The notes under the pieces are model-generated. The model was given only the letters and a program-made list of their open reading frames with translations, ran no database searches and had not been told where the DNA came from. Below, piece after piece: positions 1-10,732 of a DNA stretch of 11,318 bases (the stretch's first letter is position 1; each line of letters begins with the position of its first letter). This DNA comes from Octopus sinensis (taxonomy: Eukaryota), in contig NW_021826840.1 of NCBI RefSeq assembly GCF_006345805.1, positions 1 through 11,318 on the forward strand, written 5' to 3'. Position numbers and translations under genes: made by a program.

Positions 1-218
1 ATACATCAAAGTGACACTGGGGTACAAATATACGAAGCCCAGTATACCCATCATGACTATCCGTCTGATAAGGGTACCCCAGGTACATGCATCACAACCA
101 TCTGTGCACGACATGGAGATCACATATCAAGATAAACAGGACATGACCTTACAAATGGCGCCCAGTTAGAATTTTCTTCAGGTTGAGTAGCCCATCCTGC
201 TCAAAAGGTCCCTAAATA
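1..218 (-). mobile_element. Probable fragment of an interspersed retroposon-like repeat, cut by the window edge
   Basis: Resembles from memory a common octopus repeat (not searched). In-window support is limited to a perfect 9-bp inverted repeat, CTGGGGTAC 17-25 / GTACCCCAG 74-82, and an abrupt end at a SINE junction. Confidence 0.3.
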
Positions 219-378
219 GTCGACCTCGGCGGAATTTGAACTCAGAACGTAGCGGCAGACGAAATACCGCTAAGCATTTCGCCCGGTATGCTAACGTTTT
301 TGCCAGCTCGCCGCCTAAATTCTTTTCTTTTCTACTCTAGGCACAAGGCCCGAAATTTTGGAGGAGAGGGTAGTCGAC
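219..378 (-). mobile_element. SINE family 1: tRNA-like head (219-315) plus tail B of an upstream monomer (317-378), inverted
   Basis: The reverse complement of 219-315 is near-identical to the head at 10064-10160. The reverse complement of 317-378 matches tail B at 4145-4199. Confidence 0.93.
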
Positions 379-515
379 TTTGCCTTTTATCCTTCCGGGG
401 TCGAATAAACAAGCACCAGTTACGCACTGGGGTCGATATAATCGACTTAATCCATTTGTCTGTCCTTGTTCGTCCCCTCTATGTTTAGCCCCTTGTGGGC
501 AATAAAGAAACAAGG
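373..515 (+). mobile_element. SINE family 1 body plus tail A
   Basis: GTCGACTTTGCCTTT...ACTGGGGTCGATATAATCGACTTAATCCATTTGTC...CCCCTTGTGGGCAATAAAGAAA aligns to 3871-4007 and 10155-10292. Confidence 0.93.
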
Positions 516-536
516 AAAGGTTGTTACTATTATAAA

Positions 537-593
<57 letters not shown>
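537..593. repeat. (TAG)19 microsatellite
   Basis: Perfect trinucleotide run read directly. Confidence 0.98.
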
Positions 594-3777: not shown

Positions 3778-4199
3778 AAGGCGGAGACCTGGCAGAAACG
3801 TTAGCACGCTCGGCGAAATGCTTAGCAGTATTTCGTCTGTCTTTACGTTCTGAGTTCAAATTCTGCCGAGGTTGACTTTGCCTTTCATCCTTTCGGGGTT
3901 GATAAATTAAGTACCACTTACGCACTGGGGTCGATGTAATCAACTTAATCCCGTTGTCTGACCTTGTTTGGCCCTCTGTGTTTAGCCCCTTGTGGGCAAT
4001 AAAGAAATAAGAAAAGTTAACACGCCCGGCGAAATGCTTAGCGGTATTTCGTCTGTCTTTACGTCCTGAATTCGAATTCCGCCGAGATCGACTTTGCCTT
4101 TCATCCTTTCAGGTTCGATAAATTGCGTACTGGGGTCGATCTAATCGACTTACCCCCTCCACAAAAGTTTCGGGCCTTGTGCATAGAATAGAAAAGAAT
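3778..4199 (+). mobile_element. SINE family 1 dimer: full monomer with tail A (3778-4010) plus 5'-trimmed monomer with tail B (4011-4199)
   Basis: Both units align to the family. The first has A-box-like TGGCAGAAACG and B-box-like GTTCAAATTC. Confidence 0.95.
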
Positions 4200-5771: not shown

Positions 5772-6101
5772 GCATATGTGTGAGGTGCATGAGTGCAACA
5801 AGCGATATAAATCTACCAAAATTAATTGAAGTAATATAAGACATTTAAACGGGGAGTTTGACAAAGGACAGATGCCAAGGTTGTAAACCTGGTTGTTTAT
5901 ATCTTTTGTTAGTTTGTTAGCTTATTAGTTTATCTCTTCTGTAATTCGTGTTCTTTTTATAAATTTATGCCAAGGTAATATTGAACCTGATACACCGTGA
6001 CATCGGTAAGAATTCTTTTCTTTTTAGTCAAGTGTCAAACATGCCACCATTCTTCGTGAAAGTAAATCATTGTTCTTGGTGTTGTTATTATTGGCACTGA
6101 C

Positions 6102-6232
6102 TCCGCCGAGGTCGACTTTGCCTTTCATCCTTTGGAGGTCGATAAATTAAGTACCAGTTGCATACTGGGGTCGATGTAATCGACTATCCCCCTTCCCCCA
6201 AATTTCAGGCCTTGTGCCTATAGTAGAAAGGG
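6102..6232 (+). mobile_element. 5'-truncated SINE family 1 with tail B
   Basis: TCCGCCGAGGTCGACTTTGCC...GGCCTTGTGCCTATAGTAGAAAGG. Confidence 0.93.
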
Positions 6233-6246
6233 TTATTGCTGCTGAC

Positions 6247-6398
6247 TACGTTCTGGGTTCCAATTCCACCGAGGTCGACTTCGCCTTTCATCCTTTCGGG
6301 GTCGATAAATTAAGTCCCAGTTACGTACTGGGGTCGATATAATCAACTGGGGCACCTCCCCCAAAATGTCAGGCCTTATGCCTATAGTAGAGAGGTTA
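6247..6398 (+). mobile_element. 5'-truncated SINE family 1 with tail B and a 14-bp target-site duplication
   Basis: Flanked by identical TTATTGCTGCTGAC at 6233-6246 and 6399-6412. Confidence 0.93.
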
Positions 6399-6417
6399 TT
6401 ATTGCTGCTGACGTTTA

Positions 6418-6624
6418 AGGTGGTATGTTAGCGGATACATTAGAATGTCGGAAAAGATTTCTGGTTCTTTAGATCCTGTGTTCGAATCCAGCCAATATTA
6501 ACCTTGCTCTTCATTTTTTTCGAGAGCGATAACAAAAAATACCACTCAAACACTGGATTCTATGTAATCGAGTTATATCTCTTCAACTAAAACATGCTGG
6601 CCCTGGGGCTAAATTAGAAACATT
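6418..6624 (+). mobile_element. Highly diverged SINE family 1 copy with tail C
   Basis: AAGGTGGT start; B-box-like GTTCGAATCC; CACTGGATTCTATGTAATCGA; ends GCTGGCCCTGGGGCTAAATTAGAAAC. Confidence 0.65.
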
Positions 6625-7491
6625 TGTTACTGTCGTTGTATGTTAAGGCTATTATATGTTACTGTCGTTGTATGTTACGGTCATTGTATGTTACGGTCAT
6701 TATATGTTACTGTCGTGGTATGTTACGGTCATTGTATGTTACGGTCATTGTATGTTACGGTCATAGTATGTTACGGTCATTGTATGATACGGTCATTGTA
6801 TGTTACGGTTATTGTATGTTACGGTCATTATATGTTACTGTCGTTGTATGTTACTGTCATTGTGTGTTACGGTCATTATATGTTACTGTTGTTGTATGTT
6901 ACTGTCGTTGTATGTTACGGTCATTGTATGTTACGGTCATTATATGTTACTGTCGTTGTATGTTACTGTCATTGTATGTTACGGTCATTGTATGTTACGG
7001 TCATAGTATGTTACGGTCATTGTATGATACGGTCATTGTATGTTACGGTTATTGTATGTTACGGTCATTATATGTTACTGTCGTTGTATGTTACTGTCAT
7101 TGTGTGTTACGGTCATTATATGTTACTGTTGTTGTATGTTACTGTCGTTGTATGTTACGGTCATTGTATGTTACGGTCATTGTATGTTACTGTCGTTGTA
7201 TGTTACGGTCATTGTATTTTACGCTCATTGTATGTTACTGTCGTTGTATGTTACGGTCAGTATATGTTACTGTCGTATGTTACTGTCGTATGTTACGGTC
7301 ATTATATATTACTGTCGTATGTTACGTTCATTGTGTGTTATGGTCATTGTGTGTTACGGTCATTATATGTTACTGTCGTTGTATGTTACTGTCGTATGTT
7401 ACGGTCATTGTATGTTACGGTCATTATATGTTACGGTCATTGTATGTTACGGTCATTGTATGTTACGGTCATTGTATGTTACTGTCGTTGT
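6625..7491. repeat. 16-bp minisatellite TGTTAC(T/G)GTC(G/A)TT(G/A)TA, 55 units, four of them 13 bp
   Basis: Parsed unit by unit. Explains the 16-aa periodic ORFs (3 units = 48 nt). Confidence 0.97.
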
Positions 7492-8280: not shown

Positions 8281-8580
8281 CTGAGACAAAACCTATGCTA
8301 CCGAATGTCAACACATGCGCCTGTGCTAGAATCACTTGCTATTGTTATTGTCGTTGCAGTTGTTGCTGCTGCTGCTACTGCTAGTATTGTTGCAGTCGTT
8401 TGAACCAACTTCTGCACTTAGTCAGGACTGACCTAGACAACACAACAGTAACTTGAACAACGCGGTGTAGACGATGATCTTAATCCCTGTTTAAATGGTG
8501 TTCGTCGAGCAGAATTATGATCAAAGCGTCCAGCTGTGACGATCCTGTCTTTTTACCTCAGATCTCAACAGTTACAGAGC

Positions 8581-8744
8581 GTGGCTGTGTAGCGAAAAGT
8601 TTGCTTCCCAACTACATGGTTCCAAGTTCAGTCCCACAGCGTGGCACCTTTGGCAAATGTCTTCTACTATAGCCTCGAGCTGACCAAAGCCTTGTGAGTG
8701 GATTTGGTAGACAGAAGCTGAAAGAAACCTATCGTATACATTTA

Positions 8745-8814
<70 letters not shown>

Positions 8815-8982
8815 TGTGCGCATGCAAGTGGGTGAGCGGGCGGGTGGGCGCGCGAGCGTGTTTGTGTCTTTGTGTCTGTGTTAGTCCGCTACCATCGCTT
8901 GACAATCGGTGCTAGTGTGTTTACGTTCCGACAGATGTGCCCCAGCATGGCCGCAGTCTAATGAACGAAACAAGTAAAAGAT
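8581..8982 (+). mobile_element. SINE family 2 (tRNA-derived) with internal (GT)n at 8748-8812 and tail D
   Basis: A-box-like TGGCTGTGTAGC and B-box-like GTTCAGTCCC. ACCTTTGGCAAATGTCTT resembles from memory the start of the CORE/V domain. Tail GTGCCCCAGCATGGCCGCAGTC...GAAACAAGTAAAAG. Candidate TSD TACAGAGC at 8573-8580 and 8989-8996. Confidence 0.85.
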
Positions 8983-10036: not shown

Positions 10037-10061
10037 TTGTCTGATAATATCTATTTTATCA

Positions 10062-10637
10062 AAGGCGGCGAGCTGGCAGAAACGTTAGCACGCCGAGCGA
10101 AATGCTTAGCGGTATTTCGTCTGCCGCTACGTTCTGAGTTCAAATTCCGCCTTGGTCAACTTTGCCTTTCATCTTTTCGGGATCGATTAAATAAGTACCA
10201 GTCACGCACTGGGGTCGATGTAATCGACTTAATCCATTTGTCTGTCCTTTTTTGTCCTCTCTGTGTTTAGCCCCTTGTGAGTAGTAAAGAAATAGGTATT
10301 TCGTCTGTTTTTATGTTCTGAGTTCAAATTCCGCCAAGGTCGACTTTGCCTTTCATCCTTTCGGGGTCGATAAATTAAGTACCAGTTACGCACTGGGGTC
10401 GATATAATCGACTTAAACCCTTTGTCTGTCCTTGTTTGTCTGTCCTTGTTTGTCCTCTCTGTGTTTAGCCCCTTGTGAGTAGTAAAGAAATAGGTATTTC
10501 GTCTGCCTTTCATCCTTTCGGGGTCGATTAAATAAGTACCAGTTACGCACTGAGGTTGATATAATCGGCTGGGCTCCTTCCCCAAAATTTCGGGCCTTCT
10601 GCCTAGATTAGAAAACAAAACAAAAGAATAGAAAAAG
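10062..10637 (+). mobile_element. SINE family 1 trimer (10062-10294, 10295-10492, 10493-10637) with a 16-bp target-site duplication
   Basis: Two tail-A units then a tail-B unit; flanked by AATATCTATTTTATCA (10046-10061) and AATATTTATTTTATCA (10638-10653), 15/16 identical. Confidence 0.95.
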
Positions 10638-10732
10638 AATATTTATTTTATCAGTTATGTAAGGTGGAATCGTATTAGTCGAAATCTATCTGGAAGTAAG
10701 TGAACATTCGTTGAACGCACCATTTCTGTCAC

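What the first reader, a model, noticed from the sequence alone, without database searches (positions are those of the whole stretch)
213..540. SINE dimer with a clean 5' inversion at GTCGAC palindromes (twin-priming geometry)
Seen: flipping 219-378 between the two GTCGAC sites (219-224 and 373-378) rebuilds tail B + complete head + body + tail A. The rebuilt monomer shares diagnostic variants (CTGCCGCTAC, AATCCATTTGTC) with the unit at 10062-10294. TAAATAGT occurs on both sides (213-220 and 533-540) and its AGT end overlaps the inversion point. Established: twin priming of human L1 gives TSD - inverted 5' part - forward 3' part, with junction microhomology. Inference: a dimeric SINE RNA was inserted by twin priming. 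The apparent partner LINE here is CR1/L2-like, for which I know of few such cases. The alternative is a post-insertion inversion through 7-nt AGTCGAC microhomology. The right TSD copy overlaps an AT-rich/(TAG)n tract and could be chance.
Basis: partly seen in the sequence, partly recalled or inferred. Interest (0 to 1): 0.7.

Follow-up and report, generated by a model that had tools for sequence, protein, structure and literature searches.

The report
Octopus SINE insertion with inverted front end
One copy of a very common octopus short retrotransposon (SINE) has its front 160 bases flipped relative to its rear half, with the marks expected if the flip arose while the copy was being inserted ("twin priming"); this is known but rare for SINEs, and it is an ordinary genomic scar with no function.

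Summary
Reverse-complementing 219-378 and joining it to 379-540 gives one colinear element. It consists of a 3' fragment of a "tail-B" SINE unit, then a complete tRNA-derived head, then body and tail A. It aligns without a break across the junction to the copy at 10063-10292 (90% identity, E=6e-88).

The flipped piece and the forward piece meet at the same consensus position (2-100 versus 94-238). TAAATAGT flanks the whole structure (213-220 and 533-540; chance p about 0.01-0.02). There is 3-nt microhomology (AGT) at the 5' junction and 5-nt microhomology (GTCGA) at the inversion junction. The left flank has no SINE similarity.

This is the anatomy of a 5'-inverted retrotransposon insertion. 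Twin priming, resolved by annealing of the two cDNA ends through the self-complementary GTCGAC, is the best explanation (about 0.65).

I cannot exclude a later inversion through the 7-nt inverted repeat, a cDNA fold-back at the palindrome, or an assembly error.

The host is an octopus; the same SINEs occur in O. bimaculoides loci.

Among 63 SINE segments in 115 kb, this is the only inverted one. It is a new example of a known kind, of modest interest.

The parts
213..220 (+). Left copy of the target-site duplication, TAAATAGT
   Evidence: Exact 8-mer repeated at 533-540; p about 0.012-0.022. Other SINE arrays in the window have 10-11 bp TSDs.
218..220 (.). 5'-junction microhomology, AGT. It belongs both to the TSD and to the inverted SINE head (rc of ACT in GGTCGACT).
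   Evidence: The consensus match of the inverted head starts at 218 and the TSD ends at 220.
218..316 (-). Inverted, complete tRNA-derived SINE head (consA 2-100), ending at GGTCGACT
   Evidence: 96% identity to consA; alignment.
317..377 (-). Inverted 3' fragment of a B-type SINE unit: TCGAC, tail B, and an AAGAATTT spacer. In the template it lay directly 5' of the head.
   Evidence: consB 146-199 at 325-377, 92.6%; matches tail B at 4145-4198, 6180-6229 and 10582-10623.
373..377 (.). Inversion-junction microhomology, GTCGA. It is shared by the end of the inverted B fragment (TCGAC on the minus strand) and the start of the forward body (GTCGAC). It lies inside the 8-nt palindrome AGTCGACT at 372-379.
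   Evidence: Sequence. Consensus B has A, not G, before TCGAC in all copies.
373..517 (+). Forward SINE body plus tail A (consA 94-238)
   Evidence: 89.7% identity to consA. Its divergence does not differ from that of the head (Fisher p=0.13).
518..532 (+). 3' extension of the tail (GGTTGTTACTATTA-like, triplet-repeat-like) up to the right TSD
   Evidence: Sequence. Whether it belongs to the SINE tail or to the target is not settled.
533..540 (+). Right copy of the target-site duplication, TAAATAGT
537..593 (+). Perfect (TAG)19 microsatellite, overlapping and following the right TSD; probably part of the target site
   Evidence: TRF: 19 copies, 100% matches.

Best explanation
A single retrotransposition event into the edge of a (TAG)n microsatellite produced a 5'-inverted SINE insertion, by twin priming.

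Inferred steps:
1. The template was an RNA in which the tail of a B-type unit lay directly upstream of a complete A-type unit. This was either a read-through transcript of a genomic B-A tandem or an RT template switch between two SINE RNAs.
2. The first cDNA was primed at the bottom-strand nick. It copied tail A and the body up to GUCGAC at the head/body border.
3. The top-strand 3' end created by the second nick (...TAAATAGT-3') annealed by AGT to ACU, immediately 3' of that same GUCGAC. It primed a second cDNA through the head into the upstream B tail.
4. Both cDNA 3' ends then carried the self-complementary (G)TCGAC. They annealed over 5 nt and were repaired, which fixed the inverted 5' piece next to the forward 3' piece.

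Shown directly: the anatomy, the TSD, the two microhomologies and the contiguity in template coordinates.
Inferred: the order of events, the nature of the template RNA and the identity of the reverse transcriptase.

The element has no apparent function. It is a dead copy in repeat-rich non-coding DNA.
For: 1. Colinear rebuild across the junction, E=6e-88.
2. The inverted piece is consA 2-100 and the forward piece is consA 94-238. The two pieces therefore meet at one template position with at most 7 nt of overlap. This is as described for L1, where the two cDNAs end close together and may share sequence (PMC12016303).
3. An 8-bp TSD flanks the whole structure, p about 0.01-0.02. It is close to the 10-11 bp TSDs of other arrays of this SINE (10052-10061/10644-10653 and 8292-8281/7637-7627).
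4. The polarity is right. The inverted piece is attached to the 3' end of the left TSD copy with 3-nt microhomology, within the 2-5 nt range seen at about 70% of 5'-inverted L1 junctions (PMC2912911).
5. There is 5-nt microhomology at the inversion junction.
6. The left flank (61-218) shows no SINE similarity (scores equal to shuffles), so SINE material begins exactly at the TSD.
7. Head and body are equally diverged from consensus (p=0.13), consistent with one age.
8. The predicted RNA structure leaves GUCGAC at consA 94-99 mostly unpaired (P unpaired 0.66). The B-unit TCGAC lies in a strong local hairpin, GGUCGAU...AUCGAC, a plausible stalling point (prediction only).
9. B-tail-to-full-head tandems exist in O. 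bimaculoides.
Against: - There is no independent allele, ortholog or read evidence, so the timing of the inversion is unproven.
- The TSD is short, AT-rich and overlaps a microsatellite (p only about 0.01-0.02).
- 5' inversion is very rare for SINEs where it has been counted: 1 of 5,554 and 1 of 5,936 Alu insertions.
- It was not seen at all for an L2-clade LINE in cell assays. The authors argued that short overhangs cannot prime a second reverse transcription (PMC4245944). Here the overhang would be only 8 nt.
- None of the other 60 or so SINE segments sampled shows the arrangement.
- Both ends of the flipped piece carry the same palindrome, which is also what a plain inversion between inverted repeats would leave.
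Confidence: 0.65

Rival explanations
1. Post-insertion inversion. A 5'-truncated B-tail + A dimer inserted normally (TAAATAG|TCGAC-tailB-head-GTCGAC-body-tailA). Later, the 160-bp segment between the two GTCGAC palindromes was flipped by microhomology-mediated repair or replication template switching through the 7-nt inverted repeat AGTCGAC/GTCGACT.
For: The 7-nt inverted repeat is present at exactly the two breakpoints (218-224 and 373-379). Flipping restores a perfectly ordinary 5'-truncated insertion with the same TSD.
Against: It needs three coincidences. The 5' truncation must fall exactly at TCGAC. The target base in front must be G, to make the palindrome (consensus B has A there). The left breakpoint of a rare sub-200-bp inversion must lie at the very first base of the insert. 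Inversions mediated by 6-7 nt are very rare (my own knowledge, not tested here).
Confidence: 0.12
2. Fold-back self-priming during integration. The first-strand cDNA ran through body, head and B tail to TCGAC. Its palindromic 3' end snapped back onto the internal GTCGAC of the same strand and was extended. Opening of the roughly 150-nt loop at the base of the stem, fill-in and end joining to the left flank then gave the observed order.
For: It explains with a single pairing why both ends of the flipped segment carry GTCGAC. It is compatible with the TSD and with one-event insertion.
Against: I know of no precedent for this route in LINE/SINE integration. It requires a precise cut 4-6 nt inside the stem and does not explain the AGT overlap with the TSD any better than twin priming does. 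The sequence does not distinguish it from twin priming.
Confidence: 0.12
3. Assembly or cloning artefact. The 154-bp fragment between two SalI-type sites (GTCGAC) was mis-oriented in the assembly or in a library step.
For: The inversion is bounded by two identical restriction-type palindromes. No independent assembly of the locus could be found.
Against: A 6-bp palindrome is far too short to mislead either de Bruijn or long-read assemblers (my own knowledge, not tested here). The window has no gaps. The TSD and microhomologies fit a biological event.
Confidence: 0.04
4. Two unrelated insertions that happen to abut: a minus-strand SINE fragment next to a plus-strand 5'-truncated SINE.
For: SINE density is high, with 63 segments in 115 kb.
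Against: The minus-strand piece would lack its whole 3' half, which target-primed reverse transcription does not produce. The two pieces meet at the same consensus position (100 versus 94), a chance of the order of 1 in 200. One TSD flanks both.
Confidence: 0.02

Closest known systems
5'-inverted L1 insertions made by twin priming (Ostertag & Kazazian 2001; described in PMC2912911 and PMC12016303)
   Same: A TSD flanks both pieces. The inverted 5' piece sits next to the 5' TSD and the forward 3' piece carries the tail. The pieces are adjacent or overlapping in template coordinates. Both junctions show microhomology.
   Different: The element is a roughly 240-nt tRNA-derived SINE (plus a fragment of a second unit) in an octopus, not a 6-kb L1 in a mammal. 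The TSD is 8 bp rather than 10-20 bp. The inversion-junction microhomology is a self-complementary palindrome. The enzyme source is unknown.
Rare 5'-inverted Alu and SVA insertions in human and chimpanzee (1/5,554 Alu and 4/477 SVA in PMC2912911; 1/5,936 germline Alu in PMC12016303)
   Same: A non-autonomous SINE with a 5' inversion and otherwise normal insertion hallmarks.
   Different: Those elements are mobilised by L1 ORF2p and have poly(A) tails. This SINE has a specific, non-poly(A) tail and an unidentified partner LINE. No counts exist for this family beyond my sample of 63 segments.
Octopus tRNA-derived SINEs (OK, OR1, OR2 of Ohshima & Okada 1994; the 'tRNA-Deu'-type and unclassified SINEs that make up about 11.6% of the O. 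vulgaris genome, PMC13282606)
   Same: A tRNA-like head with a B-box-like GAGTTCAAATTCC, a conserved central domain, variable tails, very high copy number, and presence in O. bimaculoides loci.
   Different: I could not compare with the published consensus sequences, because no repeat library is available and the sequence strings were not found in papers. The family name is therefore not assigned.
Chimeric or multimeric retrocopies made by RT template switching (cited in PMC4824008 as the route to composite SINEs)
   Same: Units of different SINE subfamilies are joined head-to-tail inside one TSD. This is seen in the finding and in the trimers at 10062-10643 and 8280-7638.
   Different: Template switching alone keeps all units in one orientation. 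It can explain the B-tail + A template but not the inversion.

Membership tests
Twin-priming-type 5'-inverted retrotransposon insertion | One target-site duplication flanks the inverted and forward pieces together | tested here: met
   TAAATAGT at 213-220 and 533-540; p=0.012-0.022. The support is modest because the sequence is AT-rich and abuts (TAG)n.
Twin-priming-type 5'-inverted retrotransposon insertion | The inverted piece is attached to the 5' TSD, and the forward piece retains the 3' tail next to the 3' TSD | tested here: met
   218-377 is on the minus strand next to the left TSD; 373-532 is on the plus strand ending at the right TSD.
Twin-priming-type 5'-inverted retrotransposon insertion | The two pieces are contiguous in template coordinates, with only a small overlap or deletion at the inversion point | tested here: met
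   consA 2-100 (inverted) versus 94-238 (forward), an overlap of at most 7 nt.
Twin-priming-type 5'-inverted retrotransposon insertion | Microhomology at the 5' junction and at the inversion junction | tested here: met
   AGT at 218-220 (3 nt); GTCGA at 373-377 (5 nt).
Twin-priming-type 5'-inverted retrotransposon insertion | The inversion arose at the time of insertion (no uninverted filled allele exists) | not testable with these tools
   The junction ORF and other window ORFs are not on record. There are no homologues of the junction ORF. The metagenome scan gave only 2 unrelated contigs.
Twin-priming-type 5'-inverted retrotransposon insertion | Mobilised by an L1-type (or any identified) LINE reverse transcriptase/endonuclease | not testable with these tools
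   No LINE ORF was found in the window, L001 or L005, and no LINE library is available for comparing tails.
Octopod tRNA-derived SINE | tRNA-derived head with Pol III A and B boxes | tested here: inconclusive
   ARAGORN calls no tRNA in the window. A B-box-like GAGTTCAAATTCC and a long stem are visible in the consensus.
Octopod tRNA-derived SINE | High-copy interspersed element with TSDs, present in Octopus genomes | tested here: met
   63 segments in 115 kb, including O. bimaculoides chromosome CM046612.1 loci L001 and L005. 10-11 bp TSDs flank arrays.
   No LINE sequence was available. O. vulgaris has active RTE, Dong-R4, CR1 and L1-Tx1 families (PMC13282606), so several partners are possible.

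The most novel reading that the evidence does not exclude
The self-complementary TCGA/GTCGAC motifs built into this octopod SINE family (four per unit) may act as programmed hot spots. They would let the cDNA ends of a non-L1 LINE machinery anneal to each other or fold back. If so, 5' inversions would be recurrent in this family, with breakpoints clustered at those motifs. That would be a sequence-directed form of twin priming outside the L1 system, where cell assays so far found essentially none.
Probability: 0.1. Interest if true: 0.5.

Novelty: new member of a known kind. Interest (0 to 1): 0.3.

Why it matters
5' inversion is a hallmark of L1 integration. In the papers I read it has been counted almost only in mammals. 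It is about 20-30% for L1 but about 0.02% for Alu. It was absent for an L2-clade LINE in cell assays.

A clean natural example in a cephalopod tRNA-SINE suggests that a second priming event (or an equivalent strand switch) can happen with another LINE machinery and an 8-nt overhang. It also suggests that an internal palindrome can help resolve the two cDNAs.

As a single locus it proves nothing general. Its value is as a pointer to a cheap genome-wide census in octopus assemblies, where SINEs make up about a tenth of the genome. It has no bearing on gene function at this locus.

Tried and rejected
1. Independent assemblies or alleles of the locus. An exact look-up of the junction-spanning 66-aa ORF (288-488) and of two other window ORFs found nothing on record. 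A homologue search with the junction ORF found no candidates.

2. More SINE copies from public collections.
- A metagenome scan with a 21-nt core pattern gave only 2 contigs. They share only the conserved central domain and are not from the octopus SINE.
- Protein searches with SINE-derived ORFs, including a six-frame concatenate, gave only four proteins. Three could be traced to DNA, giving two O. bimaculoides loci (L001, L005) and one 543-bp ENA contig.
- The census is therefore tiny: 115 kb, 63 segments, and no second inverted copy. By the rule of three this bounds the frequency only below about 5-6%.

3. Left flank as a degenerate SINE B body, which would have favoured a later inversion. 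Rejected, because alignment scores equal those of shuffles.

4. Different age of the head and body pieces. Not supported (p=0.13).

5. An alternative TSD beyond the (TAG)19 tract. None is visible.

6. Rfam and ARAGORN gave only low-complexity noise and no tRNA call.

7. Partner LINE. No LINE ORFs were found in any fetched DNA.

8. Published SINE consensus strings were not found in the paper library. Ostertag & Kazazian 2001 is not held.

9. The 'diagnostic variants' as proof of a single source copy are weak. Overall identity of the two halves does not single out the 10062 copy.

Full report
**What the window is.**
- The 11.3-kb window is repeat-rich, non-coding animal DNA. It holds microsatellites, a 16-bp minisatellite and many copies of one tRNA-derived SINE.
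- There is no credible protein-coding ORF and no LINE. Rfam gives only low-complexity noise.
- SINE-derived peptides from the window hit annotated Octopus bimaculoides proteins: LOC106868243 and a kelch-like 10 isoform.
- The genomic loci of those genes are L001 and L005, on chromosome CM046612.1 of GCA_001194135.2. They carry the same SINE. The host is therefore an octopus.

**The SINE.** An alignment of 16 copies gives three modules.
- A head of about 100 nt, AAGGCGGCGAGCTGGCAGAAACG...GAGTTCAAATTCCGCCGAGGTCGAC.
- A body of about 70 nt, TTTGCCTTTCATCC...GGGGTCGAT.TAATCGAC.
- One of two tails: A (TTAATCC.TTTGTCTGTCC...AAAGAAATAAGAAA) or B (T.(G/A)CCCCCTCCCCCAAAATTTCGGGCCTTGTGCCTAGAGTAGAAAAGAA).

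Each unit holds four TCGA motifs. The last two form a local hairpin, GGTCGAT-NNN-ATCGAC.

**Check of the observation.**
- GTCGAC is at 219-224 and 373-378.
- rc(219-378) joined to 379-540 aligns without interruption to the full copy at 10063-10292 (query 63-292, 90%, E=6e-88).
- Query 2-54 matches tail B at three other places.
- Against the consensuses the pieces are: 218-316(-) = consA 2-100 (96%); 325-377(-) = consB 146-199 (92.6%); 373-517(+) = consA 94-238 (89.7%).
- The two 'diagnostic' variants are indeed shared only with the 10062 copy. One is at a CpG-decay site, and overall identity does not single out that copy.
- TAAATAGT occurs at 213-220 and 533-540. A match of 8 nt or more so placed has p=0.012 (shuffling the right-hand zone) to 0.022 (using all other window positions as the left end).

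**Refinements to the anatomy.**
- The 'GTCGAC' on the tail-B side is not a consensus GTCGAC. All B copies read AATCGAC|T at the body/tail border. B-derived sequence therefore runs only to 377, and A-derived forward sequence starts at 373. The overlap is GTCGA, 5 nt.
- At the left end the head consensus (GGTCGACT) runs to 218 and the TSD runs to 220. The overlap is AGT, 3 nt.
- AGTCGAC (218-224) and GTCGACT (373-379) are a 7-nt inverted repeat, and 372-379 is an 8-nt palindrome.
- The left flank 61-218 has no similarity to either consensus on either strand (scores 15-17, against shuffle means of about 16). SINE material therefore starts exactly at the TSD.
- Head and body differ from consensus by 4.1% and 10.0%, which is not significantly different (p=0.13). 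Other copies show similar spreads.

**Context: multimers are normal for this SINE.**
- The trimer at 10062-10643 is flanked by an exact 10-bp TSD, TATTTTATCA (10052-10061 and 10644-10653).
- The minus-strand trimer at 8280-7638 is flanked by GTTT(T)GTCTCAG (8292-8281 and 7637-7627).
- A B tail followed directly by a full head also occurs in O. bimaculoides (L001 66212/66193; it is translated in P0002).
- A template with 'B tail + complete A unit' is thus unremarkable. It could come from read-through of a genomic tandem or from RT template switching, the route invoked for composite SINEs (PMC4824008).

**Mechanism.** The structure has every sequence hallmark of a 5'-inverted insertion as described for L1 (PMC2912911; PMC12016303).
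- One TSD surrounds both pieces.
- The inverted piece is attached to the 3' end of the left TSD copy.
- The forward piece keeps the tail.
- The end of the forward cDNA and the start of the inverted cDNA lie at the same template position and may share a few bases.
- Both junctions show microhomology. About 70% of 5'-inverted L1s have 2-5 nt at the 5' junction.

The polarity works in detail. After staggered cleavage the top strand ends ...TAAATAGT-3'. Its AGT pairs with ACU in GGUCG-ACU-UUGCC. Extension gives TAAATAGT|CGACCTCGGCGG..., exactly as observed.

The first cDNA stops at the same GUCGAC. Both cDNA 3' ends then carry (G)TCGAC, which is self-complementary, so they can anneal to each other. 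The first complementary site met by the second cDNA upstream of the head is the B-unit TCGAC, and that is where the junction lies.

RNA folding predicts that the GUCGAC at the head/body border is largely unpaired and that the B-unit TCGAC sits in a stable hairpin. This is suggestive only.

**Rivals.**
- A later inversion between the 7-nt inverted repeats would leave the same sequence. It needs three things: the 5' truncation of the B unit fell exactly at TCGAC; the target supplied the G that completes the palindrome; and a rare small inversion had its left breakpoint at the first base of the insert.
- A fold-back of the first cDNA on the internal palindrome, followed by loop opening, also reproduces the order. 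It explains both palindromes with one pairing, but I know of no precedent for it.
- An assembly artefact is unlikely, because a 6-bp palindrome cannot mislead an assembler. It was not excluded.
- Two independent insertions are excluded in practice. The minus-strand piece lacks any 3' half, and the pieces meet at one consensus position.
- My weights are 0.65 twin priming, 0.12 later inversion, 0.12 fold-back, 0.04 artefact and 0.02 coincidence.

**What argues for caution.**
- 5' inversion is very rare for SINEs where it has been counted: 1/5,554 and 1/5,936 Alu.
- In cell assays it was seen only with human L1 (plus one Nimb-2_DR insert) and never with the L2-clade ZfL2-1. The authors argued that short overhangs cannot prime (PMC4245944).
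- In my small census (115 kb non-N, 63 SINE segments) no other copy shows abutting opposite-strand pieces. This bounds the rate only below about 5-6%.

**The partner LINE.** O. vulgaris has recently active RTE, Dong-R4, CR1 and L1-Tx1 families (PMC13282606). The tail could not be compared with any LINE.

**Verdict.** This is a real, cleanly resolved 5'-inverted SINE insertion in an octopus. It was most likely made during integration. It is a new example of a known kind, of modest interest, and mainly a pointer to a genome-wide census and an orthologous-site check that these tools could not provide.

Noticed in passing
window 10052-10653 and 8292-7627 (minus strand): Two SINE trimers, each flanked by a single TSD (TATTTTATCA, exact 10 bp; GTTT(T)GTCTCAG, 11/12). 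The array is a full A unit followed by 5'-truncated units. The same inter-unit junctions recur in independent arrays: tail A joined to head position ~50 (GGTAT(T/A)TCG) at 10294/10295 and 8036/8035, and tail A joined to head position ~17 (AGAAACG) at 4012 and 7851. This suggests either propagating multimer masters or microhomology-guided template switching.
   Followed up: partly
window 6102-6415 with left flank 6080-6101: A tandem duplication of 163-bp period (TRF 1.9 copies) of a 5'-truncated B unit. Each unit ends in GGTTATT(ATT)GCTGCTGAC, and a similar GTTGTTATTATTGGCACTGAC lies in the left flank. This could be a long TSD or a duplication that includes the flank. The motif resembles the 3' extension GGTTGTTACTATTA of the finding (518-532).
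   Followed up: no
window 537-593 and 1227-1350: Triplet microsatellites of the same class: (TAG)19, and a compound (GTA)n-(CAG)n-(GTA)n-(GTG)n. Each lies just 3' of SINE or SINE-like sequence. This could reflect a microsatellite-like tail or a target preference, as described for RTE-related retroposons (PMC6007223).
   Followed up: no
window 6416-6600; 835-985; 1080-1165: Other, more diverged tRNA-SINE relatives (70-78% to the consensus). The one at 6416-6600 has a different head (GTGTTCGAATCCAGCC B box) but the same central domain.
   Followed up: no
L003 1786-1824 and L004 6537-6587 (JGI metagenome contigs): The 39-51-nt central domain (CGACTTTGCCTTTCATCCTTTCGGGGT...) is 90-92% identical in contigs that otherwise do not carry the octopus SINE. 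The core domain is apparently shared with SINEs of other organisms (superfamily-type conservation).
   Followed up: no
window 6625-7491: A 16-bp minisatellite (TGTTACGGTCATTGTA), about 55 copies at 85% matches. It produces spurious long ORFs (391 aa).
   Followed up: no
window 8574-8930: Another interspersed repeat, unrelated to the SINE, with up to 14 matching places in the two O. bimaculoides loci L001 and L005.
   Followed up: no
L001 10001-66298 (P0002) and L005 (P0004): Annotated O. bimaculoides proteins contain SINE-derived peptide stretches. P0002 reads through rc(body)-rc(head)-rc(tail B). These are likely exonised SINEs or annotation artefacts.
   Followed up: no
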